Assembly (NCBI GenBank): GCA_002269645.1
Contig: NIVC01001944.1
Location: 1-64,000 of the forward strand
Length of the DNA stretch: 64,000 nt
Origin: Macrostomum lignano
Taxonomy: Eukaryota
Direction: 5' to 3'
Shown here: positions 33,949 to 63,600 of the stretch, in pieces
Layout of the letters: every line of letters starts with the position of its first letter
How positions within the stretch are numbered: position 1 is the first letter of the stretch
Translations under genes and position numbers: made by a program
Notes under the pieces: model-generated
The model's input: only the letters and a program-made list of their open reading frames with translations
What the model was told of the DNA's origin: nothing
The model's database searches: none

Positions 33949-35117
33949 ATGTCTGTAGAGCAATCAGCCACTGGAACTCAAGGCGCACCTCTGGTGGGTG
34001 AACCCATAAAGCTGCCTGAGACTGAGAAGGCTCAAAATGAAGCCGAGTTAAACCAAATTGCTACTGAGAGTAGCGTGGGTGCTATTTTAGGAAGTCTTGA
34101 CAGAACGCTGGGCAACTTGGATGCTAAGCTTGACTATGCGAGAGTGCCTGAGGCAAAGCTGAAAGCCCCACCTTGCTACCACCCTAAAATCAGATTTGAG
34201 CTCTGGGAGACACAACTCCGGGCCTATTTAAGCGTTAACAGAGTTCAGCGGGAGCACTGTGGCGGTGTTCTTTTCTCTCTACTATCGCCAGAAGTCCAAG
34301 AGTTTTACTACAATAGCAAACTACAGGATCTAGCTTTTCCAGCAGCATTAGAAGCTCTCCGCGAGCGGTACACGGACTCTAGCAGTGCCGATAAATTTTA
34401 CATTGAGCTGACAGTTGCCCACCAAGCTGATGGCGAAGGAATTCAAGAATTCTGTGACCGTCTTGTAGCCCTAGCCACCGCAGCTAAAATTTCTGCTCCA
34501 CACAGCGATCCATTGGTTCGGTCACGTTTTTGTTATGGAGTTCTAGACAAAAATCTAGCTGAGAGACTAATTACAATGACCCAGGAGTCACCCAAAGCAA
34601 CCCTTCAAGACCTCCTGAAGAAAGCCAAAAGTTTTCTAGACATTCAGAAGCTGCTGAAACCGACTGAGACAAGCAAGATCCGGCAGTTAGAAGTAGACGA
34701 GATAAGCCGACTCAAAAACAGGATCCAAGAACTTGAGACAGAAGCCAAGCAGAGGGGCAAGTTCGAACACGAATTTAATAGCCAGCCTACTGGGGGATTT
34801 AGACCACAGGCTTTGCACACTGCCACTGATAAACCACGAGGTACAATGCGCCTATCACGGGCAGGCACGCAGGCAAGCGGCACTGCTTCAGGTGCGGTTC
34901 AGCTGATCACCTGGTAGCAGAGTGCCCTGGCTCAGGTGCACCTGAAAACGGTAAATTTTCATGGCGCCACCCGAGGCAGCCCACACAGAAGGCTCAGCTA
35001 AAGTGGAAAAAGAGCTGGGTAGAATTTCCTACTGGTCAAATGCCTACGGATTCATCCAGTCTCTGCCTCTGGGAGATTCTGTTTTCGTACACTTCTCGCA
35101 GCTCAGCAGCGAGTTAA
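33949..35117 (+). CDS. gag: Gag; its CCHC zinc knuckle lies in the -1 frame after about 34830-34880
   Basis: Gag-like ORF 33949-34917. The knuckle CFRCGSADHLVAEC is at 34884-34925 in a frame that stays open to TAA 35115-35117. Confidence 0.8.
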
Positions 35118-37423: not shown

Positions 37424-40115
37424 CGTTGAGCAGACGCCGCTGGAACGCTTGGCAGACTTTGACTTCTCCGTGGAACATAGGCCTGGGGAGAGCCACATTA
37501 ATGCCGACATTCTCAGTCGCAATCCCAAATTCCGTCCGGACCATTTCGACTGCCCATCTTGCTCTCGTATTCCAGAGTTTCAGGCCAGGTTCGGATGCCA
37601 AAGTAGCGCCGTTAGAGCCGTTAAAATAGGCTGTGCTAAATTAGAAAAGCACGAGGCTTCGACTCAAACCGAAGGTACACACTTTTTAGATCAACCAACC
37701 ATGTGTGAACCCACTAGGAATGATGACCACGGCAATGAGAGCCGGCTTGATAGTTGTCACTCAGTTAGCCAAGCGATCCAGACTGATCCATCAGGCACAA
37801 ACCAGAAAGAAACCTCTGAAGATAGCCAAATTCAAGTGACAAAACCTAAGGTTCAGGTGGCTAAAATTGCAACTAATTCTAACAATGACCAAAGTGCGAA
37901 GAGTGACAGAACGAGCGGTAGTCATTCCTTCCACATTGGAACCAGCCTAGCGAATCAAGCCGCTGATGATGCAAGCGAATTAAGCCTACCACAGAGTGAG
38001 GCTGATGAGAGAGTAGATGTGGATTGGGTGACGCTGGCACAAGAGTCAAACGTAGATCTGCTGAGAATCAAGCAATCCGTAGCTGGCTCCGAACCGAAAC
38101 TTAGCAAACAGGATATTCAAGATTGCAGTCGAGAAATTAAAACTCTCTGGGCTCTGTATAACGAACTGTCAGTTGAAAATGGCTTGCTCTACCGCACAAA
38201 GCCAGCGAGGAAGGGCAAACCGAGTGTTAAGCAGTTGATAATTCCCTCGTCTGCAAATTTAGATGAACTAGTAATCAAGTACCATAGAGCGTGCAACCAT
38301 TCAGGAGCCAATAAAACCACGGCGGCATTGAAGGCACGTTTCTTGATCTTTGATCTGGAAACTTACGTAAGAGGTATCGTTGCCGAATGCGAAACTTGCG
38401 CCAGAGTTAAGAAAGGTACAAAGAAGATTAGAGCCCCCCTGCAGCCTACCTTGGCAGGGTATCCCAATCAGGTGGTACACGTTGACCATTGTGGACCTTT
38501 TCCTGAATCTAATGGTATGCGGTATCTTCTGGTGCTGATTGATCGTTTCACCAGCTTCGTCGAGATTGTCCCGGTGCCTGATGTCTCAGCAGGAACTACG
38601 GCGCTAGCCATCCTCACTGAATGGGTGGTAAGGTATGGGACGATGGAACAGATTGTCTCAGATAACGGCACTGCATTCATTAACGCTACGGTTGCCGAGT
38701 TGACTCGAATACTCGAAATCGACATGGTTAGAATCACAGCGAGAAGACCACAGGCCAATGGCAAGGCCGAACGAGCTATCCAAACGATCAAAACCAAAGT
38801 TCGGGCAGTGTGTGCTGATCGTAGAATAGGGTGGCCTTTGGCTGCTAAGCTTGTGGGGTTGTCGATCCGGACGACCGAATCCGAGTCTACCGGCTTCACG
38901 CCAGCAAAGTTGTTCTTCGGGAGAGAACTCGACATCCCCTTGGACCTCCAGTACAACCCACCACCAAGAGAATACTATGATCCGGAATCTTACGCACACA
39001 CCCTGCACAAAGCCCTGGTCGAAACATCGGCTACGGCTCGCGCTTTGCGGGGAAAGGCCCAGAGAAGACAAAAGCGCTACTATGACAGAGCCGTTTTTAA
39101 ACCCAACTTTGAAGTAGGTGAGCTGGTCTGGGTTCGAAACCCGGATCACAGAGGCCTTGACCCAGCAGTTTGGTTGGGACCATACCGCGTAGTTCAGCAA
39201 ATATCCGAGCGCAACTATCGGCTCCTGCCCGAATTTATTAGAGAAAATCCATTCATTCGAACTCCTAACCCGAGCCACAACATTTATAATGTAGACAGAA
39301 TAAAAAAATGCATACGCAAGCCGAACTATCAAGACACCATTGACCGTTTTGGTCTAAAAATAACTGCACGGTTGCCGGAATCTCGTGTGGGAAATTGTGA
39401 CGAGGACTCGCCAGCCTCGGATTCCAGCTCGGACTCCGACATGGAAGAGCGTGGATTACCTTACTTCCCAGTTGCAGGGCTGGGATCGAACCAGGTGCAG
39501 TCCAGTGAGAACCAGGTGCAGTCCAGTGAGAACCAGGTGCAGTCCAGTGAGAACCAGGTGCAGTCCAGTAAGAACCTGGTGCAGCCTGGTGAGAACCAGG
39601 TGCAGTCCGGCGAGAACCAGGTGCAGTCCAGTGAGAAACGGTTGCAGCCCGGTGAGACTTCGGTGTGTACAGGTGGAACCCAAGGACAACCGGTTGAGGA
39701 CCTTGGTCAGCCAGTTTTGGACCTGTTGCAACCCAGAACAGAGTCTGGAAATTTTGTGCAGAAGCCAGATTTTTTAAGTGAAAAACACACTCAACACCGT
39801 GTGCCTGAAGTAGGTGGTAATAGTAGCACGAATCGACTCGAACAAGTCGAGGATGGCCAGGTTCCTTCAATCGGTGCGGAGGTAGAGATAGTGGGAGATA
39901 GAACGCGTGAGTTGCCTGGAACCGCCAGCCAAGGACAGAGGACGGAGCCAGCTGGCCAGCGTGAAACAGTGGAACCAGACCCATCGTTATCAGACAGAGT
40001 CAGTACTCGGGGTAGCATTTACACCACTCGAAGTGGCAGGGCGGTTCGGCCGCCAACCAGATTTTTGCAGGTGCTTGCCGGGTTTTGCCACCGCTCCAAT
40101 TCCAACAGTCTTTGA
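37380..40115 (+). CDS. pol: Pol part 2: RNase H end, spacer, integrase and a repeat-containing tail
   Basis: HHCC motif (YHRACNHSG...CETC); DDE residues in HVDHCGP, SDNG and KAERAIQT; GPY/F motif (WLGPYRVV); QVQSSEN x about 7 (21-bp repeats). Confidence 0.92.
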   Translation: MLAQWLVILEPYNFSVEQTPLERLADFDFSVEHRPGESHINADILSRNPKFRPDHFDCPSCSRIPEFQARFGCQSSAVRAVKIGCAKLEKHEASTQTEGTHFLDQPTMCEPTRNDDHGNESRLDSCHSVSQAIQTDPSGTNQKETSEDSQIQVTKPKVQVAKIATNSNNDQSAKSDRTSGSHSFHIGTSLANQAADDASELSLPQSEADERVDVDWVTLAQESNVDLLRIKQSVAGSEPKLSKQDIQDCSREIKTLWALYNELSVENGLLYRTKPARKGKPSVKQLIIPSSANLDELVIKYHRACNHSGANKTTAALKARFLIFDLETYVRGIVAECETCARVKKGTKKIRAPLQPTLAGYPNQVVHVDHCGPFPESNGMRYLLVLIDRFTSFVEIVPVPDVSAGTTALAILTEWVVRYGTMEQIVSDNGTAFINATVAELTRILEIDMVRITARRPQANGKAERAIQTIKTKVRAVCADRRIGWPLAAKLVGLSIRTTESESTGFTPAKLFFGRELDIPLDLQYNPPPREYYDPESYAHTLHKALVETSATARALRGKAQRRQKRYYDRAVFKPNFEVGELVWVRNPDHRGLDPAVWLGPYRVVQQISERNYRLLPEFIRENPFIRTPNPSHNIYNVDRIKKCIRKPNYQDTIDRFGLKITARLPESRVGNCDEDSPASDSSSDSDMEERGLPYFPVAGLGSNQVQSSENQVQSSENQVQSSENQVQSSKNLVQPGENQVQSGENQVQSSEKRLQPGETSVCTGGTQGQPVEDLGQPVLDLLQPRTESGNFVQKPDFLSEKHTQHRVPEVGGNSSTNRLEQVEDGQVPSIGAEVEIVGDRTRELPGTASQGQRTEPAGQRETVEPDPSLSDRVSTRGSIYTTRSGRAVRPPTRFLQVLAGFCHRSNSNSL

Positions 40116-42607: not shown

Positions 42608-43843
42608 GTGTGGATACATTTTTCTATACCAAATATTCATAAAAATTACATATACTTGATATAATTATATATTTCTTGTTTTTTAACCACTAGTAAATCA
42701 TAGATTATAAAATGTAAAATTAAATATAGAGAAAATCATTGATTTTAAATAACAAATATTCAAAATTTCAAAAGAAGCTTTTTTGTAGTCTCAAAATCTT
42801 CTCTTTCTTTCTTTTCTTTTATTTTCATGTAACTAAAGTTGAGCTATCTCTATCTGTGTGCTTAATAATAGATAGATAAATGGCTCAACCAATTTTCACC
42901 CAACTTGGACTATTTGATCAGAAATTTCCCTGTGATAGTATATGCATTGTAGCTAAGAAATTGCTCAATGCTAAAGCAATTAAATATTTAAAACACATGC
43001 TGTTTTGTAAAGGTCAAGCAAAATTTTTGACTTGAAATATATTATAAGAATTTTAGAAAAAAACTGACAGACTAAATTCTGATTATAATAAAGACTACAT
43101 CAAAATAGGTTTATCTATGTACTGGCTAAATTTTGATGTTTGACAAATTGTGTCACAGTGTTGAAAACCAGTGTGAAAGCATAAAAGCACCAGACTTGAT
43201 TAAGATTGCATTAACCATATTGCTAACTTTCCTGGAGACTGATACTGGCTGACTAAGAAATCAATTATATCATAACAAGGCTTACTAAGGGAATTGCATA
43301 GATGTCAAGGCTTACTGGAATAATTGCTAAAATGTCAAGGCTCATAAAAAATTTCTAAGATGTGTAGGCTTACTGGGGGAAGTGCTGGGATGTCTGAGAT
43401 ATCTAGCTGTAAATTGCAGCATGCACTCAACATGATCCAGAGAGTATGATATGTCATTTATTTGAAACATTATTCATTCCTTTGTTTGTTGTCTCTCCAA
43501 TGGGAAAACTAAGATTGCTGGTTGTTGCAATAATAATGAAATAGCTTATAAGCAATTCATTCCAAAGAAAATTGGCCATTGACTATTATTATTTTATTTG
43601 AAACCCTATGCTTATTTGTACTAATCAGTTGTATCCTAAGTGATGGAGTTTGACATTAAATGTGCTGTCCATCTTGTGGCAAAGCGCGTGACCACAAAGC
43701 AAGGGGTAAGAGTCATCCTGCCAGCAGTTATACCCTATATCATCAATCCCTGAGCACGCACATGGGTATGTACACAGGTACAGTGCTCACACAGGTGTAC
43801 AGTGGCCCTGCTAAATTTCATGCCCTCTCTCAAGAGCTAGTTG

Positions 43844-44265
43844 ATGTCGGACTCAGCTTCCTTGCGACATCGCAACAGTGGTCGTCGCTGTAGCCGAAGC
43901 CGAAGCCCCAGCCGGGCTGCTCATCGCCGGCACCGCAGCCGGAGTCCGTGTCACCGGCACTCGCCAGCACCGACTGTGGGCAGGTCCGAGGCGAAGCAAA
44001 GCCGCAGCAGCCGCAGCCACGGCCTGCACCGCCGTAGGGGCTCGCGCGAACGAAAGTCCAGTCCAGCGGAGGGGTCTGGCAGGAGTGGCAGCGCCAGGAA
44101 TAAGACGGACTCCAGCGGTGCTGGCACTCTCAGGCCCGCTTGGAGCTCCGACTGCTGCGAAGAAGTTCGCAGGGTGGTGCTCGTGCACAAGAGGGATCGG
44201 CCTCTGCGTCAGCAGGCGGAAGATGGAGAGCCTGGCCAGCAACTCGTGAGTTGATGTGGGACAGG

Positions 44266-44301
<36 letters not shown>

Positions 44302-44344
44302 TAGTGTCTGTCTGTCTGTCTGTCTTAGTGTCTGTCTGTCTGTG

Positions 44345-44423
<79 letters not shown>

Positions 44424-47400
44424 AGTCCTAACTCCGAGCCACATGTCCCTCGCAGACAGCTGCACAGCCAACAGAGGCCGGGCAGAGGCGGGAGCAGCCA
44501 GAGCCGCACCCGCCAGCCGCCCCGCCAGCCGCCCCGCCAGCCGCCCCGCCAGCCGCCGCGCAGGCTGCCTCACCAGCCGCCCCGCCAGCCGCCCCGCAGG
44601 CTGCCCTGGTCTCTGGTAGCCAGCAGATTCGCCTGTGCGAAGCGACCAGACGCCGCATCGCCGACGGCACCGGAAGCGAGCCAGCGGAAGCCGAGGTCGA
44701 CGGCGTCAATTTAGTCACGTCTTCCTTTGGCAGATTTGGCCGCTCGCCAGCAGTGGCAGCGGCGGCGACTTCGGTGGCAACGGAAGCGGCAGAGGCGGCG
44801 GTGGCAACGGAGCCAGGGGACGCCAGCAAGGGCGGCGGCAGCGAGAATTGCCGAGCCGGAGCTTCGGCTAAGCGAAAAGCTGACGGCGACAGGCGAAGCC
44901 GCCGCAGTCGGTCACGGTAGGGGTGACGGGGAAGTTTTCGTGGTGAGATGCTTGGGTTGGGAAAGTTTGGTGGATTGCGTAGGTTGAGGAGATTTGGAAG
45001 TTTGGGATTGGGATACCGGATTGGGAAGTTTGGGGATTGGGTAGTTTTGAGGATTGGGAAGTTTGGGGATTGGGTAGTTTTGAGGATTGGGAAGTTTGGG
45101 GATTGGGTAGTTTTGAGGATTGGGAAGTTTGGGGATTGGGTAGTTTTGAGGATTGGGAAGTTTGGGGATTGGGAAGTTTGGGGATTGGGAAGTTTGGGGA
45201 TTGGGAAGTTTGGGGATTGGGAAGTTTGGGGATTGGGTAGTTTTGAGGATTGGGAAGTTTGGGGATTGGGTAGTTTTGAGGATTGGGAAGTTTGGGGATT
45301 GGGTAGTTTTGAGGATTGGGAAGTTTGGGGATTGGGTAGTTTTGAGGATTGGGAAGTTTGGGGATTGGGTAGTTTTGAGGATTGGGAAGTTTGGGGATTG
45401 GGAAGTTTGGGGATTGGGAAGTTTGGGAGATTAGGAAGCTTGGGGATTGGGAAGTTTTAGAATTGGAAAGTTTAGGAGATTAGGAAGTTTGAGATTGGGA
45501 TGCCGGATTGGGAAGTTTGGAAGTTTCGGGGATTGAGGTTTCGGATTGAGAAGTTTTGGGATTCGGAAGTTTGGCGATAGGGAAGTTTGGGGATAGGGAA
45601 GTTTGGGGATAGGAAAGTTTGGGGATAGGGAAGTTTGGGAGATTAGGAAGTTTGGGGATTGGGAAGTTTGAGATTGGGATGACAGGTTGGGAAGTTTGGG
45701 AGATAAGGAAGTTTTGTAGTTTATAGATTGAGATCTTTTGGAATTAGGAAGCTTAGACTCGGGGAAGTTTATGGGAATAGTTTGGAGTTGAGGAGGAATT
45801 TTTGAATTGGAGAGTTTGGGGTTCGGCGGTTTGATGTTTGGGATTTTCCGACCTCATCGGCATTAAAGCCGCTGCGATCCCCGAATTTTCAGCAGCTCCA
45901 GCAGCTCGGATATCAGCGTCCGACGCAGCGGCAGAGGCGGCTCCGACGGCCGACTGAAGATTGACAAGCAGCGGCTGCGCCGGAAAGCCATCGAGAACAC
46001 CGTGCAGCGGCTCGGCGAGCGGTGCCCCCGTCGGCTGGCAGACCTGCCCTGCTTCAAGGCGCTGGGGGTCAAGGTGGGTGGACGCCGACGGTCCCGAAGC
46101 TCCACCAGGCTGATTTTTAATTAGAGGTCTATTAAAAGCTTAAAGGTGCTCACTCATCTCACCAGCTGCTCACTCATCTCACCAGCTGCTCACTCATCTC
46201 ACCAGCTGCTCACTCATCTCACCAGCTGCTCACTCATCTCACCAGCTGCTCACTCATCTCACCAGCTGCTCACTCATCTCACCAGCTGCTCACTCATCTC
46301 ACCAGCTGCTCACTCATATCACCAGCTGCTCACTCATCCCACCAGCTGCTCACTCATCTCACCAGCTGCTCACTCATCTCAGCAACTGCTCACTCATCTC
46401 AGCAGCTGCTCACTCATCTCAGCAACTGCTCACTCATCTCAGCAGCTGCTCACTCATCTCACCAGCTGCTCACTCATCTCACCAGCTGCTCACTCATCTC
46501 ACCAGCTGCTCACTCATCTCAGCAGCTGCTCACTCATCTCACCAGCTGCTCACTCATCTCACCAGCTGCTCACTCATCTCACCAGCTGCTCACTCATCTC
46601 ACTCATCTGCAGATCAGTGAGCTGGAAAGAATCTGTCAAAAATTGACGGCCGCAGAAGAAAAGCAAAATCAGCAAGAACAAGAAGAGAAAGCTTCTTCTA
46701 GTCTTCCAGCTTCTTCTAGGAGCAAAAACTGCTGCTCCGAGCCGACTCAGAATGCTTCAAGCAGCCTGCGGCATCCATTTGAACTGTCCGAGTCAGCGAA
46801 AACTTCGTTCGCTACGTCGCTGTTCTCATCAACAAAGTCTTCTGCTCCTAGTAGATTCGGCGAGTCCAAGACCGATCAGAAGCAGCAATTGCTGGCTTCA
46901 TTTCCAGTTAGCAGCGGTGAGAGACTTGAGTAGAAATAATTACTAATGATAGCCTAAAGTGCTAAATTTCCTACTACTCTGTCAGGGCATTCCTGATATA
47001 AATCTAGTGAAAAAGTGCGTTAAAGCTACTTGTTCTAAGCAGTATTTTCGGGCATGCGAATGAAATCACGATAACGTGAAAACTGTTGTCGAAACAGCTT
47101 TAGAAATTTTGTAGAATTAAAATGCCTTTAAGCTACTTTAACTTTTGATAGTCTGTGAGTAGTATTGTTAAAACATGTTCGCTATTATTATTATGAACAA
47201 AGTTTTAATAATGCAACACCCGCTTGGAACAGGCCAATTCCATCGGCAAAGTGACGAGACTCCTGACCGAGGCGGCGGCCAAGCTGGAGGCGACACCGAG
47301 GCTCTTCAAGAGCAGTCACGGTTGCAGTCCGCCGCCCCAGCTGCTTCAGTTGTGATCAACGGATCCGATGCTAACGAAACCGCTCGGGCCAGCCAGCAGC

Positions 47401-49583
47401 AAAACCACCAGTCACCGTCGCAGTCTTTATCCGCTTTACCAGCCGCTAGCGTGGACAAAGACCGACTGCTCGCTTTGGCAGACTGGGCCGCCTCCCGTCC
47501 TCAGCAGCAGCAGCAGCAGATACGGTCAAAGAGCCCGCAGGCCTGGGTTAAGAAGGTGGGCGATTCTCATGGGGAATGTGGGCGATTCTCATGGGGAAAT
47601 GTGAGCGATTCTCATGGGGAAATGTGAGCGATTCTCATGGGGAAATGTGAGCGATTCTCATGGGGAAATGTGAGCGATTCTCATGGGGAGACCGGTGGGA
47701 GATTCCCAGATTCTCATGGGGAAACTGGAGGGAGACCCCCAGATTCTCATGGGCAGTGTTGGAGATTCTCATGGGCAGTGTTGGAGATTCTCATGGGCAG
47801 TGTTGGAGATTCTCATGGGCAGTGTTGAAGATTCTCATGGGCAGTGTTGGAGATTCTCATCGGCAGTGTTGAAGATTCTCATGGGCAGTGTTGAAGATTC
47901 TCATGGGTAGTGTTGAAGATTCTCATTGGCAGTGTTGGAGATTCTCATGGGCAGTGTTGGAGATTCTCATGGGCAGTGTGGAAGATTCTCATGGGCAGTG
48001 TGGAAGATTCTCATGGGAGACCGGTTGGAGATTCCCGGATTCTCATGGGGAGACTACCAGATTCTCATGCGGAGACTCCCAGATTCTCATGCGGAGACTC
48101 CCAGATTCTCATACGGAGACTCCCAGATTCTCATGCGGAGACTCCCAGATTCTCATGCGGAGACTCCCAGATTCTCATGCGGAGACTCCCAGATTCTCAT
48201 GCGGAGACTCCCAGATTCTCATGCGGAGACTCCCAGATTCTCATGCGGAGACTCCCAGATTCTCATGCGGAGACTCCCAGATTCTCATGCGGAGACTCCC
48301 AGATTCTCATGCGGAGGCTCCCAGATTCTCATGCGGAGACTCCCAGATTCTCATGCGGAGACTCCCAGATTCTCATGCGGAGACTCCCAGATTCTCATGC
48401 GGAGACTCCCAGATTCTCATGCGGAGGCTCCCAGATTCTCATGCGGAGACTCCCAGATTCTCATGCGGAGACTCCCAGATTCTCATGGGGAGACCGGGGC
48501 AGATTCCAAGATTCTCATGGGGAGACCGGGGCAGATTCCAAGATTCTCATGGGGAGACCGGAGGGAGACTCCCTGATTCTCATTGGAGACGTCTCCAATG
48601 CAATCCCTAAGAGCTCATCCCTGCTGCCCTTCCAGCACCAGTTCCTGAATGCGCAGCCAATCACTGGCGGCATCGGGCACCACCTGATGCAGAAGATGGG
48701 CTGGCGGGACGGCCAAGGCCTCGGCAAGCGGAACGAGGGGCCCACAGAGCCGCTGGCCATTGACTACAAGACTGACAGGAAGGGTGAGCTGTGGCGATTC
48801 CATCCAATCAAATTCATCCGATTCCCCACCCCGTTCCCCATCCGATTCCCCACCCCGATCAACATCCGATTCCTCACCCGTTCCTCATCCGATTCCCCAC
48901 CACGATCCCCATCCGATTCCCCACCCCGTTCCCCATCCGATTCCCCACCACGATCCCCATCCGATTCCCCACCCCGATCCCCATCCGATTCCCCACCCCG
49001 ATCCTCATCCAATTCCCCACCCCGATCCCCATCCGATTCCCCACCCCGATCCCCATCCGATTCCCCACCCCGATCCCCATCCGATTCCCCACCCCGATCC
49101 TCATCCGATTCCCCACCCCGATCCCCATCCGATTCCCCATCCGATTCCCCACCCCGATCCCCATCCGATCCCTCATCCCGATCCTATTCAATAATCTTAG
49201 CGATCCCTGCTCCACTAAAAACCCTTATCTGGAGTCCCCAGAGCTCGCCTAGCAACAAGAACCCCACTGCCCACCCCAGGCCTGGCCGCCATCGATGACA
49301 GGCCGGTTGCTGCAAAGCACGGAGCCGGCAGCGGCCGGAAGAAGAAATCTTCAGCGCTGCCGCCCGCCTCCGTCGTTGCTGCAAATGCGGCAGCCTCGAC
49401 CGCGGCCGCTGCGGCCGCTGCCGCCGTCTCCGGGACCTCGCTGGAGCATCTGGACGGCAAGCACCCCATCAGCGCCCTGCTGGAGGCCGCCCGCCGGCGA
49501 CGACTTCCGGAGCCGCAGTTCCGGTTGGTGCACCACAGCGGCCCCGCGCACTCGCCCTGCTTCGTGTTCTGCGTAAGTCTCTG

Positions 49584-49654
<71 letters not shown>

Positions 49655-49683
49655 ATGTTTGTCTGTCTGTCTGTCTGTCTGTA

Positions 49684-49720
<37 letters not shown>

Positions 49721-49956
49721 TGTCTGTCTGTCTTAGTGTCTGTCTGTCTGTCTGTTTTTCTGTCTGTCTGTCTGTCTGTCTGTCAGTCAGTCGGTCCGTG
49801 TGCCAGTCAGCCAGACCGCCCGGCCGCCCGCAGGTGCAGATCGGCAGCACGGAGTACCAGCCCACCCGGCCCTGCAGAAACAAGAAGGACGCGAAAGCCT
49901 GCGCGGCCACCTTCGCCCTGCAGCAGCTTGGCATTGTGCCAAAGCCTGATTATTAA
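43844..49956 (+). CDS. SON: SON-family splicing cofactor (RS region, FPVSSG motif, G-patch, dsRBD)
   Basis: Eight phase-consistent exons: 43844-44245, 44456-44916, 45893-46073, 46613-46916, 47233-47555, 48636-48783, 49280-49572, 49834-49956. Peptides [72 protein letters not shown]...[19 protein letters not shown] and [10 protein letters not shown] match SON. The start codon is tentative. Confidence 0.9.
44960..45780. repeat. Intronic G-rich minisatellite (GGGATTGGGAAGTTT-based)
   Basis: Fills SON intron 2. Confidence 0.9.
46148..46605. repeat. Intronic 20-bp tandem repeat CTCACTCATCTCACCAGCTG
   Basis: Fills SON intron 3 up to the acceptor. Confidence 0.95.
47560..48590. repeat. Intronic 22-23 bp tandem repeat with a GATTCTCATG core
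   Basis: Fills SON intron 5; the variant units change progressively along the array. Confidence 0.95.
48800..49190. repeat. Intronic 24-bp tandem repeat CCGATTCCCCACCCCGATCCCCAT
   Basis: Fills SON intron 6. Confidence 0.9.
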
Positions 49957-50469
49957 AAGCGGCAGCCTGTATATGATACAATTATATGATAAACCTGTAA
50001 AAACTGAAAGCATTTCAGCGTGTTAAGAATATTGCATACAGAATCCAATTGCATTTTCGCGAGTTTGTCAGTCAGAGCTCAAGTTGAAATTTATTGCCAG
50101 TTCGTTCTGCTTGACGCCATAATAATGCTGGCAGTTCCACCGACTGCCTGCTAATTGCTCTGTAATCTTTAATTGATTTTTTGTTTAGATTAACTAGCAT
50201 CAATAATACATTTGTTCTTGAGTATTTACTGTTAATCACTGCGTTACAGTGTAGCTTTTGTACTTCATTGGACTTAAAAAGAACAAAATGTACTTTTCAA
50301 TGCTTTTTCTTTATTTACTGGACTGGGTCACGTGACTGCAACATAAAATTAACATAAAATTATTCAATCAATGAGCTGGAACTTTTGCGAACAAACTTTA
50401 AGTTTAACAGGTACTCGAAAATTTTCCACAAGAAAGCTTCCGCCAAAATCCTGCAAGCAATCCTTATAG

Positions 50470-50730
50470 ACCCATTTGTCCATCAAGATTTGTCCACCGA
50501 GGTTTGTCCACCGAGGTTTGTCCACCGAGGTTTGTCCACCGAGGTTTGTCCATCAAGATTTGTCCACCGAGGTTTGTCCACCGAGGTTTGTCCATCAAGA
50601 TTTGTCCACCGAGGTTTGTCCATCAAGATTTGTCCATCGAGGTTTGTCCATCAAGATTTCTTCACTGAAATTTGTCTAGAGATTTGTCCACCGATATTTT
50701 TCTCAGAGATTTGCCCACAGAGATTTTGTC
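50470..50730. repeat. 14-bp tandem repeat CCACCGAGGTTTGT
   Basis: Lies between the SON stop codon and the second cassette. Confidence 0.9.
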
Positions 50731-50977
50731 CACTAAGATTTGTCTGAATAAAACAGATGTTACGATTTTCAAGATGTAACTTCTATTTTCCACGACTTTA
50801 TTCTGCAGTGTTCAATTATGGTTTTTATTCATGTATGTTCGTTAGGCTCAGGGAATTAGTCTATGTGCTGTGCTCAATAATCTGTTTGAAATCCACTAAA
50901 AATTTACATGTAAGAACTTGAGAAGCCAGACATTCAGACAGCTTTTCAGTTTTTGCTTTTAGATTTTTTCCTATCAG

Positions 50978-53482
50978 AGAGACTGGCTGATGCAGAAGAG
51001 CGAGCAGCCTTCGTCCGAGGCAAAGCTCCAACGAGCATTCTCTTCGCTGAGCTTGGGGCAGCAGCAGCAGCAGCAGCAGCAGCGGGCCTTCAGCTCCGGC
51101 GGCCTCTGGCCCAACAGTCGGCCGGAAGTCGCTATCAGACAGTCGCAGGCTCTGGTGGCCGCATTTCCGGTCAGCTGCGGTGAGCTTTTGTAGCGGTGCT
51201 TGGGAGGTCACGGGCTCGAGCCCCACAGGAGCAGGCATTCATGCTGACTAACCCTGACACTTATGCTGGCTCGACCAGACATTTATGCTGGCTCACCTGA
51301 CATTTATGCTGGCTCACCTGACATTTATGCTGGCTCACCTGACATTCATACTGACTCACCTGACATTTATGCTGGCTCACCTGACATTTATGCTGGCTCA
51401 CCTGACATTTATGCTGGCTCACCTGACATTTTTGCTGGCTCACCTGACATTCATACTGACTCACCTGACATTTATGTTGGATTCGCTGACACCTACGGTA
51501 CCTCGGGTGCACCCTGTTTGTCTGGCCATGGCACCCATAATTTTGCCTTTTCGGTTGCTCAGGCCGGCTGCACAAACACATCAACAGCAGCGGCGGCAAG
51601 GCGCGGCCACAGAAGCATCGCGCAGAGACGTCGGAGTCGGCCAAGACGGCCGGTGGCGATGATGGCGGCGTCTCGACTACGCAGCCAACGTCTTCACTTG
51701 CTGCAGCTTCGAGTGGGCGGACCCTGAGAATGGAAATGGCAAAAACCGGACAGGCTGCAGTACAGACCGGACAGGCAGAAGGAAAAACCGGACAGGCTGC
51801 AGTACAGACCGGACAGGCTGAAGGAAAAACCGGACAGGCTGTAGTACAGACCGGACAGGCTGCAGGAAAAACCGGACAGGCAGAAGGAAAAACCGGACAG
51901 GCAGAAGGAAAAACCGGACAGGCTGAAGGAAAAACCGGACAGGCTGTAGTACAGACCGGACAGGCTGAAGGAAAAACCGGACAGGCTGTAGTACAGACCG
52001 GACAGGCTGAAGGAAAAACCGGACAGGCTGTAGTACAGACCGGACAGGCTGAAGGAAAAACCGGACAGGCTGCAGGACACCCCGAAAGTACAAAAAGACA
52101 GGTACAAAAGGTAAAGACTAATTTCACCAAGATCCATCACTGATAAGTTGAAAAGTTCCGAATTGGCTTCAAAAATCAGCGGTCGCTGCCCCCCTCAGCG
52201 CGACCCATTCGCCAACGCCCAGCCAATCATGGCCGGGCCCGGGCTGGACCTGATTCGTCGAATGGGCTGGCGGGAGGGCCAGGGCCTCGGCAGGCAGGGC
52301 GAAGGCCGCGTCGAGCCCGTGGCGGTTGCTATGCGAACCGGGCGAGCGGGTGAGTGACAGATGGTGGCCCGCTAATCTACAAGTTGTACAACCCTATACA
52401 ACTATCAATTGTGCTTAAAATGACTCAGACCGTACTTACCTATCCTTCACTTACGTGTGCTGAGCTCAAAACTGCACTTGCACCCGACTCATCACCAACA
52501 AAGGCCTGGCCAGTGACGGTGAAAAAACAGGAATCCGACCTCGGCTGCCGCAGCCCCCACCTCGGCCTTGCCCGCCGCCGTCCAGGCAGCCACCAAGGAA
52601 GAAACCCGACAGGGCGAGCGCGCAGGCCCGCATGCACCGGCTCGGCCACCTGAGCCAGAAGTACACAGGCCACTCGCCGCGCTATCGGCTTATCAGAGAG
52701 GTGGGGCCGCCAGGAGCCAAGATGTACCTCTACTCGGTGAGACCGGCTGCGGACCCGCCTGCTACACCGCTATCTGCTAACAATGCCTCTCTACCCTCAC
52801 TCTACCCCCTACTCTGCCACTATATCCCCACTCTACCCACCACTTTTCTACTCTACGCACTACTCTGCCATTCTATCCCACTCTACCCACTACTCTGCCA
52901 CTATATCCCCACTCTACCCACTACTCTGCCATTCTATCCCACTCTACCCACTACTCTGCCATTCTATCCCCACTCTACCCACTACTCTCCCATTCTATCC
53001 CACTCTACCCACTACTCTACCATTCTATCCCACTCTACCCACTACTCTGCCATTCTATCCCACTACTCTGCCATTCTATCCCACTCTACCCACTACTCTG
53101 CCATTCTATCCCACTCTACCCACTACTCTGCCATTCTATCCCCACTCTACCCACTACTCTGCCATTCTATCCCCACTCTACCCACTACTCTCCCATTCTA
53201 TCCCACTCTACCCACTACTCTGCCTCCCTACCTACTACACAAGCGGCCTACCTACCACACAGCCACACCTGCTGGCACTCAATCAACAGCAGCAACCCCC
53301 CCCCCACGCGGCCGCAGGTCACAGCGCTGCACTGCACCTATCAGGCTGGCCAATTCCGACCAAGCCGCTGGCTGGCGAAGGCGGCAGCGGCAGAGTTGGC
53401 CCTGAGGCACCTGGACCCCGGCGACGCGGCCCCCATGCCAGCTGCACAGCCGCGGAGCAGGCGGCAAAAGCATGGACGATGA
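50978..53482 (+). CDS. Second SON-type C-terminal cassette (FPVSCG, G-patch, diverged dsRBD); no start codon assigned
   Basis: Exons 50978-51179, 51563-52110, 52199-52349, 52531-52736 and 53318-53482 join into one open frame. G-patch: PFANAQPIMAGPGLDLIRRMGWREGQGLGRQGEG. dsRBD end: VTALHCTYQ...RWLAKAAAAELAL. Intron positions and phases match the SON gene. Confidence 0.75.
52780..53230. repeat. Intronic ~30-bp tandem repeat (CTACCCACTACTCTGCCATTCTATCCCACT)
   Basis: Fills the last intron of the second cassette. Confidence 0.9.
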
Positions 53483-53939
53483 GAAAGTGAAAACCGATCA
53501 TCCGATTATAATAATGCATAATTATAATAATTATTATTAGTACTGGAAAATCTTTAGTCTATTTTGACAACAAGGATGTTTGAGTAATGCATGATTAGAC
53601 ATAACAATCTACAGCAGGCTTACAGTAACTCAATAATTAGTAATACAAAGTATTCAGGTAATAATAACTCTATGTAAACTAAATAACCAAATTTATCATC
53701 ATAAATAAATAATTATTGAATTTTACAATCAAGACCTAGCGTACTCTTATATTTAGTAAACAGAGACAGATTCGCAATAAAATTAATTCCTACTGTAAAA
53801 TCAGCAATTATGCAATACAGAAGGAAAGTTGTTCAATAAAACCACGTGAAAAGAAATCTCTGTGCAAAAATGAACAAGACTTGAACTTAGCACCATGAAA
53901 GAAAAACTGTTTCAACACAGATACTTTATATCTAGGGGT

Positions 53940-54110
53940 GGTTGTGTAGTAGAGAACGAGTGTACATTGGGGTGGTTGTGTGGTAGAGAAAAAGTGTACA
54001 TTGGGGTGGTTGTGCGGTAGGGAATGAGTGTACATTGGGGTGGGTGTGCGGGTAGGAAATGAGTGTACATTGGGGTGGGTGTGCGGGTAGGAAATGAGTG
54101 TACATTGGAG
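53940..54110. repeat. ~35-bp tandem repeat with a GAGTGTACATTGGGGTGG core
   Basis: About 5 copies just downstream of the OXCT1 stop codon. Confidence 0.8.
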
Positions 54111-54160
54111 TAGCAAGAGGCAAGGCGGTCAAAGCGAGAGCCGATCAGTCGGCAGCGCAC

Positions 54161-55026
54161 TCAGATCTGCCCCATCATGGTCAGCTGCTCGGACACCTGG
54201 AACTGCGCCTCCGTGCACTCCACCAGGTCCTGAACTGAAATACCTTCAGCAATCTCGGTGAGCACCAGACCCTGCTCCGGGTCCACGGTGAACACGGCCT
54301 TCTCGGTGATCAGCATGTCGACGCAGGCCTTTCCGTTGAGAGGCAGGCTGCACCTGTCCAGGATCTTCGCTTTACCGTCCTGCGGGACCAGGGTGATTCA
54401 TGAGGTTCCTGAACCATGCCATTGTTTCTTCATTCCAAAGAATGCGCGTTGCCCTTTAGAATGCAACCCCGCGTCCTGCACTCTCTGAAGCTGCAACCCC
54501 ACCTTCTGCACCCCCCAAAGCTGAGTTGCACTCTGAAGCAATATCCCTGAAGCGAGCAAACAGCGCAGCCTCACCTTGGCGCAGTGCTCCATAGTGACCA
54601 CCACTTTGGTCCCTGGCACCCCCACCAGGTCCATTGCACCGCCCATGCCTTTGACCAGCTTTCCAGGAATCATCCAGTTGGCCAGGTCGCCAGTCTTTGA
54701 CACCTGCATCGCGCCAAGCACCGTGACGTCGATGTGGCCGCCGCGGATCATGGCGAAGCTGGACGCCGAGTCGAAGTAGGCAGCTCCTGGCAGCGCCGTC
54801 ACCGTCTCCTTGCCAGCATTGATTAGGTCCGGGTCCACCTGCTCGGCTGTGGGATACGGGCCCAGGCCGAGGAAGCCGTTCTCCGACTGCAGATGCACCT
54901 TCATGCCAGCGGGGATGAAGCTGGCGGCCAGCATCGGGATTCCGATACCCAGGTTCACGTACATGCCGTCCTTGAACTCCAGCACTAGGCGGCGGATGAT
55001 GCGCTCGCGCGACGACTCGCCGACCT
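54161..55026 (-). CDS. OXCT1: Succinyl-CoA:3-oxoacid CoA-transferase (SCOT), last two exons
   Basis: Exons 55026-54575 and 54379-54161 with GT-AG boundaries. Motifs [14 protein letters not shown] (catalytic Glu), [23 protein letters not shown] and VVVTMEH. Upstream exons are not in the window. Confidence 0.92.
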
Positions 55027-55339
55027 CTGGGAGGATTTTGGGATTTTTAAATTGCCGTGTGTGGGCCCAGTGCCATAGACATATGTGAGATACCACAGTA
55101 AGTTTTTTTCCAAATCCCTAGTGCTACATAAAAGTGGCGTCGCAAGCACTCCTACAGTCTCCAAGCCATCGCGCTGTCCCTGTGACCGGAAACGGCACAA
55201 AGTCGCCGAGCAAGATCCCGAGTCAAAGTACGACGCAGACTGTCTAAAGGCAAGGCGCTTTCCATACATCAGGAATGATTGAGCTACTAGAAGAGAGCAG
55301 CAATCTCGACCACTGGATGGGTTGCTTTGATATCGCTGC

Positions 55340-60699: not shown

Positions 60700-63600
60700 C
60701 ACAATTCAGGCGAAATCATCAATCTGCAAGACAGCGCCCATGCTGGTGTTCTAGAGGTTCACCGTATCGATGCGAGCCGTCTGGAGCCCCAGCTCAACAT
60801 CTTCGAAATGGTGCGCGAGTGTCGGGATGTCATTGAAAGGACTATCACAGCGCGACAGCAAACCAACGTCGTCTTGCGCGCCCAGTTGCGTCTAAAAATC
60901 AGCATGAGAAGATGGCAGGCTGGTGAGTTCGTTGCTGAGGAAGACAAGTGGATAAGCAGCTGCTTAGAAGAGATTCGGAATTTTGAAGATTGGTGGAATT
61001 CGCAATTAGCAGCCTGCGAAAGGACTTGTGAGTCCATGAACACGAACGGCAGTGGTTGGAGCATAGGTGGAATCAACTTCTTTGATGTCTGCATTTCCCG
61101 TGGCGATCGCGTGCGCTACTATGTTGGTAGAAGCAGCAGCTTTGTACTTCCCGAAGGTCTTAAGCAGAAGCAGGCCGTAATCAACCCACCGAGTGAAGGT
61201 GAAAATTGCTTTCTGTATGCCTGTCTAGCAGTGCTGCATCATGGAGAGGAAAGTTTGCGAAAATCTCCGCACGCGCTTGCAACCTACCGGCCTTGGTTTC
61301 ACGAAATTTGCTTGAATGGCATAAGCATGCCAGTGAGTATCTATGGTCTATGAGTATCTATGGAATGCTTTAGACGAGATTGAGAACTTGAACCCTGACT
61401 TCTGCTTCACAGTGCTTTCCTGGCGTGCTGGTAAAGTGGAAGTTTTGCATCAACCTAAAGCAGCCACCACAGTAGGGCGCCGCCTTCTGCCATTGCTTTA
61501 CCTCATTGACGACGACTCTGGCAGCTCTCACTGGTGCGCGATTGTAAACCTGAATCGTCTACTCAACAGCAAAGATGGACTTCACCAGCGCAAGTGGTGC
61601 GAGCGCTGTCTATCCGCTTTCAGGTCAGAGGAGAGACTGCAAGAGCACCGGCAGAGCTGCTGAGTCAGACGAGCTTTCCGTCAAAGAAGTATTACCAACG
61701 GAGGAAAACAACTGCTTGACTTTCCAAAACTGGCAGAAAACTATTTCACCGCCGTTTACAGTCTACGCTGATATGTAATCATTCAATGCTGATGTTGACG
61801 ACGAAGTCCGCGGAGCCGCTGCCGGAACCAAAAAGCTTTCCCAGCATCTTCCAGCTGCAGTCGGCTACCTGCTAGTACAAAGCGAAAATACTGCAGGCCC
61901 TGATCTCAAAGGCAGGAATGAAAGCCTCCAATTGTTCAGAGAAGACGATCCAGAACTGTGTGTCGAACAATTCCTTAGATCCCTTGAGACGCTTTCAAAG
62001 GAAATCTTTCAATGGAACCGAGAACACAGCTACCAAAAAAAGATTGTCAATGACGAAGCTAACCGAAAGTTCGAAACAGCTCAGAGTTGCTACTACTGTG
62101 ACGAATCTTTTTCGTGTCCGTCCGAAAAACTGTGGGATCACGATCATCTGACTGGGCTTTTCCGCGGTGCTGCGTGTGCTGCATGCAACCTCAAGGCTCA
62201 GTTGAAGCGACGCTTTTTGCCAGTGTACTTCCACAACCTCAAATCCTACGACCTACATCTGATCTTTTCGACGGCTTTGTTCAAGATGACACACTGGAAG
62301 TTGAGCGTGACTCCCCAGACCAGTGAACGGTACATTTGCTTGAAGGCGGAATTTCCAGTTGGTGAGTACACCTTACCGTCCGGCAAGAAGCGTCCGCTCA
62401 ATTTTACCGTCCAATTTTTAGACTCACTCAATTTTCTGGGTTGTAGTCTTGAAACTGTGATGCGCACTCTAACGGCTGAAAGTTGCCCTCTTACGTTGGA
62501 GATGAAGGTGCACCATCCGCAACTTTCGAATGCTATTCTGCTAAGTAAGGGGATTTTTCCCTACGACGCTGTGAAGAAACCTGCCGATTTGCTTGTTACG
62601 AGTCTGCCGTCACAAGAGAACTTTTTCAACGTGCTCACGCAATCGCCTTGTCCTGATTCAGACTATCAGCATGCACTGCGAGCGTGGCATGAATTGCAAG
62701 TCAGTAACCTTGGACAGTACATGATGGCCTACCTAGAATTAGACATCCGCCAATTGGCAGATGCATTCGAATCATTCAGGAGATTGAGTCTCGCTGACGA
62801 CGGCTTGGATCCGGTGCACTTCATCACGGCACCAGGATTGTCATTCGAATCGGCACTTAAGTGTGCGAAACATCGCTTGGAGCTTCTAGTCGATGGTGAC
62901 ATGTACCGCATGGTGGAGGCTGGCATCCGAGGAGGAATTACTTTCACCAATGTACACCAGGTCTCCGTGAGTGGTGGAGATGAAGAGGAAGAGGAACGCA
63001 GATACTTACTTCCGCTAGATGTTAACAACCTATATGGTCAGGCTCTCTCTATGCCGCTAGTGAGTGAATTTCGATGGGTCGATCAAGACGAGCTGCGAAG
63101 TTGGGATGAAAGCACTGTTCTCAACATGCAAGATGATGGCGGCCATGCCTATCTCATTGAAGTCGATCTGCAATATCCAGAATGCATTCACCAGAAGACC
63201 GAGGAGCTGCCACTGGCCCCAGAGAAGGGAACTATTGAGTTTGAAGACTTTCCAGCCTATATGCAGCAGCTATGGCATCAGCTAAATCCAGGTAAAAAGT
63301 ACCACGGAACGCGAAAACTACTTCTCACTTGTCAAGACAAAGAAGCCTATGTTGTTCATAGCAGAGTGCTCAAGTTCTACCTTCAACAAGGCGCGTAAGC
63401 AAGTTCCGGCGAGCCATCAGCTTTCGACAAGAGCGAGTGTTCAAGAGCTACATCGATAGCAACAGCGAAAAGCGTTCAAAAGCATCTACAGAATTCGAAA
63501 AGAACTACTACAAGAGCAAGAACAATAGTCTTTTTGGAAAGACTATGGAGAACGTTCGGAAGAGGAGAGATGTGAGAATCTGTAACAGTGATCATCAAGC

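What the first reader, a model, noticed from the sequence alone, without database searches (positions are those of the whole stretch)
50978..53482. Duplicated SON C-terminal cassette that could be an alternative 3' end with a rewired dsRBD
The five-exon block repeats the FPVS(S/C)G, G-patch and dsRBD order with identical intron positions and phases. Its first exon opens in phase 0 without an evident start, like SON exon 4, so the donor at 46073 could splice to either 46613 or 50978 in frame. The dsRBD KKxAK motif becomes RWLAK and the HPISAL helix is replaced, predicting altered RNA binding while helicase-activating G-patch residues are kept. SON is usually single-copy.
Basis: partly seen in the sequence, partly recalled or inferred. 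Interest (0 to 1): 0.7.

Follow-up and report, generated by a model that had tools for sequence, protein, structure and literature searches.

The report
Short tandem paralogue of flatworm SON
The block is a real, intact copy of the last five exons of the neighbouring SON-like splicing-factor gene of the flatworm Macrostomum lignano, but it is already annotated as a separate 428-residue gene and most likely starts by spliced-leader trans-splicing, so it is an ordinary, if fast-evolving, paralogue and not an alternative 3' end.

Summary
The five-exon block at 50978-53482 is real. All its introns are GT-AG, and the exons enter in phases 0,1,0,1,0, exactly as in SON-like exons 4-8 at 46613-49956. 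The order FPVS(S/C)G, G-patch, dsRBD-like domain is the same.

The window is from Macrostomum lignano (Mlig_3_7-like assembly). GenBank's transcript-derived annotation already lists the block as a separate gene, PAA62377.1 (BOX15_Mlig015457g1, 428 aa). The upstream gene is annotated separately with its own stop.

Published estimates of the share of M. lignano genes that are SL trans-spliced run from 21 to 39%. The leader ends in ATG, which reads in frame into the exon at 50978. A first exon that opens with an acceptor is therefore what a trans-spliced gene looks like.

The only AATAAA after the SON-like stop lies about 230 nt before that acceptor, which fits an operon-like pair. This is inferred; no reads were available.

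All four assembly copies are intact. Window copy versus the other three gives 10 synonymous and 3 non-synonymous differences (pN/pS about 0.1).

The dsRBD has lost conserved helix-1 Glu, loop-2 His and KK positions, while most G-patch positions are kept.

Verdict: lineage-specific SON paralogue. The alternative-3'-end reading is not supported. Interest is low to moderate.

The parts
50947..50977 (+). Pyrimidine-rich tract and AG acceptor (…ttttttcctatcag|) in front of B exon 1. Proposed SL trans-splice acceptor, with the outron upstream.
   Evidence: Read from the sequence. The tract nearest the acceptor, TTTTTCCTATCAG|AGAGAC, is identical in all four genomic copies; just upstream of it the window copy differs from the other three by one substitution and a 2-nt indel. 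An in-frame TAG at 50961-50963 closes the genomic reading frame upstream. Trans-splicing itself is inferred and was not observed.
50978..51179 (+). B exon 1. It enters in phase 0, has the annotated start ATG at 50990-50992, a poly-Q run, and ends with the FPVSCG motif split in phase 1.
   Evidence: The SL ends in ...TTGCATG; ATG + AGA GAC TGG CTG ATG is in frame with the ORF.
51563..52110 (+). B exon 2. It holds an in-frame 21-nt (7-residue) tandem repeat, KTGQAEG/QTGQA(A/V)V, about 16 copies at 51741-52077. The other genomic copies are shorter here.
   Evidence: 548 nt here against 404 nt in the other copies; both keep the frame.
52199..52349 (+). B exon 3: G-patch domain.
   Evidence: Pfam PF01585, 44.1 bits. 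41% identity to the A G-patch region. PDB matches to G-patch proteins NKRF and TFIP11/STIP.
52504..52736 (+). B exon 4: Pro-rich linker, then helix 1 and strands 1-2 of the divergent dsRBD.
53318..53482 (+). B exon 5: strand 3 and helix 2 of the dsRBD (RWLAK in place of KKxAK), a basic tail and the TGA stop.
53704..53840 (+). Candidate poly(A) signals of B: AATAAA at 53704, 53776 and 53835.
   Evidence: These are motif matches only.
43844..49956 (+). Parent gene A, the SON-like gene. Eight exons: 43844-44245, 44456-44916, 45893-46073, 46613-46916, 47233-47555, 48636-48783, 49280-49572, 49834-49956. The product is 744 aa with an RS-rich N-terminus, FPVSSG, G-patch and dsRBD.
   Evidence: model. 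It matches GenBank PAA46353.1 (735 aa, sister contig) from its first Met to its last residue, apart from scattered substitutions and short indels. Pfam.
49957..50977 (+). A 3'UTR plus the A-B spacer (1021 nt). It holds a 14-nt-period minisatellite at 50474-50744 and the only AATAAA, at 50747-50752, about 230 nt before the B acceptor.

Best explanation
B (50978-53482) is an independent, expressed and selectively constrained tandem paralogue of the Macrostomum lignano SON orthologue (A, 43844-49956).

Origin: B arose by a partial duplication that copied only the 3' half of the gene (the FPVS motif, G-patch and dsRBD exons). The duplication happened before the genome duplications that now give four assembly copies of the A-B pair.

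Product: B encodes a 428-aa protein. It lacks the RS-rich N-terminal part of SON. It keeps a G-patch and has a dsRBD fold that has lost the conserved helix-1 Glu, the loop-2 His and the second Lys of KKxAK (the canonical RNA-contact positions, from general knowledge). It is therefore more likely a protein-interaction ('type B') dsRBD or a weak RNA binder.

Proposed mechanism for the 5' end:
- The AG at 50976-50977 is used as a spliced-leader trans-splice acceptor.
- The 35-nt SL supplies the cap and a 3'-terminal AUG that is in frame.
- Translation starts at that AUG or at the ATG at 50990.
- The pre-mRNA is probably read-through from A, making an operon-like pair.

Shown: the gene structure, homology to SON, separate annotation, intactness, purifying selection and the residue changes.
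Inferred: trans-splicing at 50978, co-transcription with A, and the biochemical consequences.
For: 1. Organism and annotation.
- One search returns B as PAA62377.1 (BOX15_Mlig015457g1, 428 aa, 100% identical, M. lignano), starting MQKSEQ at 50990.
- The GenBank gene set derives from RNA-seq transcripts cut at trans-splice and poly(A) signals, with low-expression novel transcripts discarded (PMC5730564).
- A is separately annotated on sister contig C4907 as PAA46353.1 (735 aa), next to the B copy PAA46352.1.

2. Trans-splicing context.
- Published estimates of SL trans-spliced M. lignano genes are 21% (Grudniewska 2018, as cited), 30% (deduplicated gene set) and 38.8% (Wudarski 2017).
- About 15% of genes lie in operons, defined by a repeat-adjusted spacer under 1 kb.
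- The SL is CGGTCTCTTACTGCGAAGACTCAATTTATTGCATG (PMC8629364; PMC5730564).
- The exact 35-mer occurs 43 times in this genome.
- The flatworm SL 3'-terminal AUG can act as initiator (PMC9851317, citing Cheng 2006).
- SL-ATG joined to 50978 is in frame.

3. Spacing.
- A stop to B acceptor is 1021 nt, of which 271 nt is minisatellite.
- The single AATAAA is about 230 nt upstream of the acceptor.

4. Selection.
- All four copies (C1944, C710, C711, C4907) have intact ORFs and conserved splice sites.
- Window copy versus the other three: 10 synonymous and 3 non-synonymous differences, pS 0.053, pN 0.005, binomial P=1.4e-4.
- Introns are about 3% diverged.

5. Family.
- The best non-Macrostomum relatives over G-patch plus dsRBD are proteins named 'protein SON'.
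- Of 30 columns at least 90% conserved in 68 SON representatives, A keeps 29 and B keeps 20. The B losses cluster in dsRBD helix 1, the loop-2 His and KK.
- No third SON-like locus exists in the genome.
Against: - No read-level data could be reached, so neither SL reads at 50978 nor the poly(A) site of A was seen.
- The acceptor hexamer TATCAG does not fit the enriched YTNCAG motif. That motif was found at only about 44% of the sites.
- A and B carry different transcript-cluster prefixes (Mlig000652 against Mlig020262/Mlig015457). They were therefore probably not assembled as one precursor. The authors note that transcriptional units break at repeat-rich operon spacers, and there is a minisatellite here.
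- B's dsrm Pfam score is below the gathering cut-off (20.1 < 23).
- The single-sequence AlphaFold model is unreliable (pLDDT 47).
- B sits on a very long branch, and its grouping with A is weakly supported (SH-aLRT 39). A lineage-specific origin from A rests mainly on adjacency and shared intron positions.
Confidence: 0.75

Rival explanations
1. B is a separate paralogue with its own promoter in the roughly 1-kb spacer, and its mRNA is not trans-spliced. On this view transcription starts upstream of 50978, or a short non-coding 5' exon is cis-spliced to 50978. Translation starts at ATG 50990. The AG at 50977 is a relic of the ancestral exon boundary or an ordinary cis acceptor.
For: - The annotated CDS starts at the internal ATG.
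- A and B have different transcript-cluster names.
- Most M. lignano genes are not trans-spliced.
- A GTAAGA donor-like site lies at about 50911, some 65 nt upstream of the acceptor.
Against: - The spacer holds the A 3'UTR and its only AATAAA, leaving about 230 nt for a promoter.
- The strong pyrimidine tract and AG sit exactly at the frame-0 exon boundary, with an in-frame stop just upstream.
- The SL-AUG is in frame.
Confidence: 0.2
2. One reading: B is an alternative 3'-terminal cassette of the SON-like gene. The donor at 46073 would splice to 50978 in place of 46613, giving an RS-domain protein with the B-type G-patch and dsRBD.
For: - Both acceptors are in phase 0, so the junction would be in frame.
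- Both blocks lie on the same strand, 1 kb apart.
Against: - The frame compatibility is simply inherited from the duplication.
- The junction would have to skip five good exons plus the A stop, 3'UTR and AATAAA.
- The transcript-based annotation gives two separate genes.
- B has its own conserved ATG.
- None of the four proteins returned for B's C-terminal part in a 271-863-aa length range carries A's exons 1-3. The only 'fusion', A0A1I8H7M8, is a UniProt entry (probably an older ab initio model) that joins the last exons of A to B through stretches that appear to be translated minisatellite.
- The 46613 acceptor is transcribed 4.4 kb earlier, so co-transcriptional splicing favours it (inference).
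Confidence: 0.05
3. B is a decaying partial duplicate, that is a transcribed pseudogene with no protein function.
For: - Very long branch, with 10 of 30 family-conserved residues lost.
- dsrm score below the Pfam cut-off.
- Biased amino-acid composition.
- An expandable repeat lies inside exon 2.
Against: - All four copies have open frames and all splice sites are intact.
- pN/pS is about 0.1, with P=1.4e-4.
- The G-patch is well conserved.
- The hydrophobic-core positions of the dsRBD are kept.
Confidence: 0.03

Closest known systems
SON (metazoan nuclear-speckle splicing cofactor; Drosophila 'son RNA binding protein')
   Same: - Same C-terminal order: FPVS(S/C)G motif, then G-patch, then dsRBD at the very C-terminus.
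- The best non-Macrostomum database relatives are annotated as SON.
- Intron positions match those of the adjacent M. lignano SON orthologue.
   Different: - B has no RS-rich or repeat-rich N-terminal scaffold (428 aa, against 744 aa for A and 2000-3800 aa for the vertebrate-size SON entries found here).
- It lost 10 of 30 family-invariant residues, including the conserved dsRBD helix-1 Glu, loop-2 His and KK positions.
- It has its own poly-Q run, heptad repeat and Pro-rich linker.
Degenerate ('type B') dsRBDs, such as the third dsRBD of TRBP/PACT or Staufen dsRBD5 (from general knowledge)
   Same: - The hydrophobic core is kept.
- A low-confidence model gives secondary-structure elements in the order helix, four short strands, helix, close to the dsRBD alpha-beta-beta-beta-alpha pattern.
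- The conserved helix-1 Glu, loop-2 His and KKxAK lysines are substituted, as in domains that mediate protein contacts instead of dsRNA binding.
   Different: No binding data exist for B. Its only solved-structure sequence match is to RNA-binding TRBP dsRBD1 (E=4.4e-4). The 'type B' classification is an inference.
SL trans-spliced downstream genes of flatworm or nematode operons
   Same: - Same strand as the upstream gene.
- Short spacer: under 1 kb, and about 230 nt after the upstream AATAAA.
- The first exon opens with a pyrimidine tract and AG.
- The SL 3' AUG is in frame.
   Different: - Trans-splicing at this site was not observed here.
- The two genes of the putative operon are parent and partial daughter copy.
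Other short G-patch cofactors of DEAH helicases (NKRF, SUGP1, TFIP11, RBM5 G-patches)
   Same: The G-patch matches them in the PDB sequence search. The Gly pattern hhxxxGWxxGxGLG is kept.
   Different: The partner helicase is not known even for SON itself (PMC13111387). None of those proteins combines a G-patch with a C-terminal dsRBD.

Membership tests
SON family (C-terminal module) | G-patch domain near the C-terminus | tested here: met
   PF01585, 44.1 bits against a cut-off of 22. 11 of 14 highly conserved G-patch columns are kept.
SON family (C-terminal module) | dsRBD immediately after the G-patch, ending the protein | tested here: inconclusive
   - PF00035 scores 20.1 bits, below the cut-off of 23.
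- phmmer against PDB matches TARBP2 dsRBD1 at E=4.4e-4.
- HMMER aligns B residues 1-160 end to end with many SON C-termini.
- The intron splits the domain at the same place as in A.
- Homology is likely, but the domain is degenerate.
SON family (C-terminal module) | Conserved FPVSSG(S/T)QHR-type motif upstream of the G-patch | tested here: met
   B has AAFPVSCGRLHKH and A has [16 protein letters not shown] proteins from other animals have QFPVSSG(T/S)QHR.
SON family (full-length orthologue) | Long RS-rich or repeat-rich N-terminal region | tested here: not met
   B starts at 50978/50990 and has no RS region. A has one in its exons 1-3. B is therefore a truncated paralogue and not the SON orthologue; A is the orthologue candidate (29 of 30 invariant columns kept).
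RNA-binding-competent (type A) dsRBD | Helix-1 Glu, loop-2 GPxH His and the KKxAK lysines | tested here: not met
   B has E->H, H->G and KK->RW; only the last Lys is kept. A keeps all of them.
SL trans-spliced gene of M. lignano | [quoted passage not shown] | tested here: inconclusive
   A pyrimidine tract and AG precede 50978, and the tract nearest the acceptor is conserved in four copies. The absence of a partner donor cannot be shown from DNA alone. The hexamer does not fit YTNCAG.
SL trans-spliced gene of M. lignano | RNA reads that carry the 35-nt SL joined to the exon | not testable with these tools
   No read or transcript collection for this species could be reached.
M. lignano operon (criteria of PMC8629364) | Adjacent genes on the same strand, repeat-adjusted spacer under 1 kb, downstream gene SL trans-spliced | tested here: inconclusive
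   Same strand. The distance from stop to acceptor is 1021 nt, or about 750 nt after subtracting the 271-nt minisatellite, and less still from the real 3' end of A. The trans-splicing criterion was not tested.
Alternative 3'-terminal exon cassette of the SON-like gene | Transcripts that join the shared upstream exons to either cassette | tested here: inconclusive
   The junction would be in frame. The transcript-derived annotation gives two genes, and none of the proteins returned for B carries A's N-terminal exons. Reads were not examined.

The most novel reading that the evidence does not exclude
A 5'-truncated tandem duplicate of SON, made only of internal and terminal exons and lacking promoter, first exons and start codon, was rescued as a gene because the species uses SL trans-splicing. 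On this reading:
- the orphaned acceptor at or near the ancestral internal exon boundary became a trans-splice acceptor on read-through transcripts of the parent gene;
- the leader supplied the cap and an in-frame AUG;
- the result is a parent-daughter operon whose daughter then evolved quickly into a G-patch protein with a dsRBD that no longer binds RNA.
Probability: 0.35. Interest if true: 0.5.

Novelty: new member of a known kind. Interest (0 to 1): 0.28.

Why it matters
SON is single-copy in most animals, and its G-patch/dsRBD module is poorly understood; even its partner helicase is unknown. A naturally 'minimised' paralogue that keeps the G-patch, drops the RS scaffold and alters the conserved dsRBD positions could serve as a separation-of-function probe in M. 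lignano, which can be made transgenic and treated by RNAi. If trans-splicing is confirmed, the locus would also be a clean example of how SL trans-splicing lets partial gene duplicates become expressed genes. As it stands it is an already-annotated hypothetical protein and an ordinary tandem paralogue.

Tried and rejected
- Exact-product look-ups for transcript or assembly contigs encoding PAA62377.1 and PAA46352.1 found nothing on record.
- Supplement and full-text searches for Mlig015457 and Mlig020262 found nothing.
- I first read the '.g2' suffix of the sister B copy as 'second gene of a transcriptional unit', which would have been operon evidence. I rejected this. The prefix comes from 95%-identity clustering of transcripts. 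The A copy is 'Mlig000652g4', which matches four genomic copies, so the suffix probably numbers copies.
- My third word-based homologue search used too narrow a region (G-patch only) and returned only a self hit, so it was wasted. The second was swamped by low-complexity words.
- The AlphaFold single-sequence model of B exons 3-5 had mean pLDDT 47. I did not send it to a fold search, because matches would be meaningless.
- The tree placed B next to P0031, an odd long-branch prediction. I treat this as long-branch attraction and not as a B orthologue.
- UniProt A0A1I8H7M8 fuses the end of A to B through stretches that look like translated minisatellite. I treat it as a probable ab initio artefact and not as evidence for a fusion transcript.
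- The extra matches to the last 38 residues of B at three other loci are by-products of a segmental duplication of the downstream region and not further SON-like genes.
Full report
**What is there**

Reading 43.5-53.7 kb and translating it gives two adjacent genes on the + strand.

Gene A has eight GT-AG exons: 43844-44245, 44456-44916, 45893-46073, 46613-46916, 47233-47555, 48636-48783, 49280-49572 and 49834-49956. It encodes 744 aa. The N-terminus is RS-rich, followed by an FPVSSG motif, a G-patch (Pfam 55 bits) and a C-terminal dsRBD (43 bits).

Block B is the finding. It has five GT-AG exons: 50978-51179, 51563-52110, 52199-52349, 52504-52736 and 53318-53482. The exons enter in phases 0,1,0,1,0, the same as A exons 4-8. 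The four internal introns interrupt the protein at matching places. B has FPVSCG, a G-patch (44 bits) and a sub-threshold dsrm match (20.1 bits against a cut-off of 23). BLASTP aligns only the G-patch region, at 41% identity.

There is an in-frame ATG at 50990, 12 nt into exon 1.

**Where the window comes from and what is annotated**

A protein search with B returned a 100% identical GenBank protein from Macrostomum lignano. It is PAA62377.1, 'hypothetical protein BOX15_Mlig015457g1', 428 aa, starting MQKSEQ... at the 50990 ATG, on a 219,525-bp contig. That length is the length of the window's contig. The genome is 764 Mb in 5269 contigs, which fits the published Mlig_3_7 assembly.

According to the genome paper, the GenBank gene set is a filtered, RNA-seq-derived transcript assembly. 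Its gene boundaries were cut at mapped trans-splice and poly(A) signals, and novel transcripts under 0.5 RPKM were dropped (PMC5730564). B is therefore a transcribed, separately called gene.

On sister contig C4907 the A copy is PAA46353.1 (735 aa). It matches my eight-exon model from its first Met to its last residue, apart from scattered substitutions and short indels. The neighbouring accession PAA46352.1 is the B copy.

None of the four proteins returned for B's C-terminal part has A's exons 1-3 in front of B. The query carried A exon 3 only to widen the accepted length range; words and scores came from B's G-patch-to-end region alone. The single 'fusion' entry, A0A1I8H7M8, is a UniProt model, probably an older ab initio prediction. 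It joins the last exons of A to B through stretches that appear to be translated minisatellite.

**Why the first exon looks start-less**

M. lignano trans-splices a 35-nt spliced leader onto a large share of its genes. Published estimates are 21%, 30% (deduplicated set) and 38.8%. The leader is CGGTCTCTTACTGCGAAGACTCAATTTATTGCATG. About 15% of genes lie in operons, defined there as same-strand neighbours with a repeat-adjusted spacer under 1 kb and a trans-spliced downstream gene (PMC8629364). The exact leader occurs 43 times in this genome.

A trans-spliced gene's first exon begins at a 3' acceptor, which is what is seen at 50976-50978...ttttttcctatcag|AGAGAC. The acceptor, the pyrimidine tract next to it and the ATG are identical in all four genomic copies; just upstream of that tract the window copy differs from the others by one substitution and a 2-nt indel.

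The leader ends in AUG. Joined to 50978 it reads AUG AGA GAC UGG CUG AUG, which is in frame with the B ORF. Flatworm SL 3'-AUGs are documented initiator codons (PMC9851317, citing Cheng et al. 2006).

Between the A stop (49956) and the B acceptor there are 1021 nt. Of these, 271 nt are a 14-nt-period minisatellite (50474-50744). The only AATAAA is at 50747, about 230 nt upstream of the acceptor.

Taken together, the most economical reading is a trans-spliced downstream gene, possibly processed from A read-through transcripts. I could not reach reads, so trans-splicing and co-transcription remain inferences. The acceptor hexamer TATCAG does not match the enriched YTNCAG motif, which is present at about 44% of the sites.

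**Is B functional?**

The A-B pair occurs on four contigs: C1944, C710, C711 and C4907. That is in line with the duplicated karyotype of the sequenced line. No other SON-like locus exists.

The three other B copies are identical to each other in exon 1 and exons 3-5. They differ from the window copy by 10 synonymous and 3 non-synonymous changes in those exons (pS 0.053, pN 0.005). The binomial probability of at most 3 of 13 being non-synonymous under neutrality is 1.4e-4. Unique intron sequence differs by about 3%.

All copies keep open frames and splice sites. Exon 2 carries an in-frame 21-nt repeat whose length differs between copies. B is therefore under purifying selection and is not a pseudogene.

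**Family placement and the 'rewired' dsRBD**

HMMER was run with B exons 3-5 against 1.84 billion representatives. It found only M. lignano entries at high identity. After those came many proteins aligned across G-patch plus dsRBD at their C-termini. The ones I looked up are named 'protein SON' or 'son RNA binding protein' and come from insects, an arachnid, a lungfish and a gecko.

In a tree of 72 such modules, B sits on a very long branch of about 3-4 substitutions per site. It is weakly attached next to A (SH-aLRT 39), together with an odd long-branch prediction.

Thirty alignment columns are at least 90% conserved in 68 SON representatives. A keeps 29 of them and B keeps 20. The B losses are:
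- helix 1: P->R, V->M, E->H;
- the loop-2 His: H->G;
- KKxAK: RW in place of KK;
- one F->Y change;
- in the G-patch: two K->R changes and one D->G.

The hydrophobic core positions are kept.

A PDB sequence search links B's last 80 residues to TARBP2 dsRBD1 (E=4.4e-4). A single-sequence AlphaFold model is unreliable (pLDDT 47). Its secondary-structure order, a helix, four short strands and a helix, is close to the dsRBD alpha-beta-beta-beta-alpha pattern.

B probably keeps the fold but not canonical dsRNA binding, which is an inference. The claim that 'helicase-activating' residues are kept goes beyond present knowledge, because the partner helicase of SON is listed as unknown (PMC13111387).

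**Verdict on the alternative-3'-end idea**

The in-frame compatibility of 46073 with 50978 is real, but it follows automatically from duplicating phase-0 exons. Several points argue against the idea:
- separate transcript-based gene models for A and B;
- B's own conserved ATG;
- the A stop, 3'UTR and poly(A) signal lying in between;
- no returned protein that joins A's upstream exons to B;
- a species-typical alternative explanation for an acceptor-first exon.

I put it at about 5%. A paralogue with its own promoter and no trans-splicing remains a serious rival at about 20%.

**Novelty**

This is an already annotated hypothetical protein. Recognising it as a truncated, fast-evolving SON paralogue, possibly expressed through SL trans-splicing of a partial duplicate, adds modest interest.

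Noticed in passing
window 53367-55040; L012 (C1944:96629...), L013 (C1689:~238000), L014 (C1321:~293300): The last 116 nt of B exon 5, its 3'UTR and the downstream region recur at three other loci, one of them 43 kb further along the same contig. The shared stretch includes the CoA-transferase exon on the minus strand. Identity is 78-98%, and the breakpoint lies inside B exon 5. This looks like a segmental duplication of the downstream neighbour that dragged a B fragment along.
   Followed up: partly
window ~49280-50910 versus 50912-53900, compared with C710/C711/C4907: Divergence between the assembly copies is mosaic. A exons 7-8 are identical in all four copies, and the non-repeat spacer up to about 50910 is nearly so. 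From about 50912 onward, through all of B, the window copy differs by 2-6% from the other three. This suggests a recombination or gene-conversion boundary just upstream of B.
   Followed up: partly
window 43838-43846: The annotated start ATG of gene A (43844) is preceded by ...gagctag|TTG ATG. An SL-AUG joined after that AG would also be in frame (AUG UUG AUG UCG). A may itself be trans-spliced, but this was not tested.
   Followed up: no
window 44266-53224 (introns of A and B) and 50474-50744: Nearly every intron of both genes, and the spacer, holds a different minisatellite with a period of 4-33 nt and 150-720 bp in length. B exon 2 has a coding 21-nt repeat. This fits the reported 13% tandem-repeat content of the genome.
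   Followed up: partly
window 33910-40115 (+): An LTR-retrotransposon-type gag-pol ORF set with RVT_1, RNase H and integrase domains lies about 3.7 kb upstream of gene A.
   Followed up: partly
window 24837-27300 (+): Non-LTR (LINE-like) reverse transcriptase ORFs, split by a frameshift.
   Followed up: partly
window 10113-12252 (-): Two adjacent ORFs match the two halves of the Kyakuja-Dileera-Zisupton (KDZ) transposase domain.
   Followed up: partly
window 61779-63395 (+): An ORF with endonuclease VII and protein-primed-type DNA polymerase B matches, probably part of a Polinton/Maverick-like element (the element type is my reading of the domain pair). I described it only and did not analyse it further.
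   Followed up: no
window 54401-55117 (-) and 6039-6818 (-): A CoA-transferase exon (PF01144; by my reading a 3-oxoacid CoA-transferase-like gene) lies downstream of B on the opposite strand. A SET-domain ORF lies near the start of the window.
   Followed up: partly
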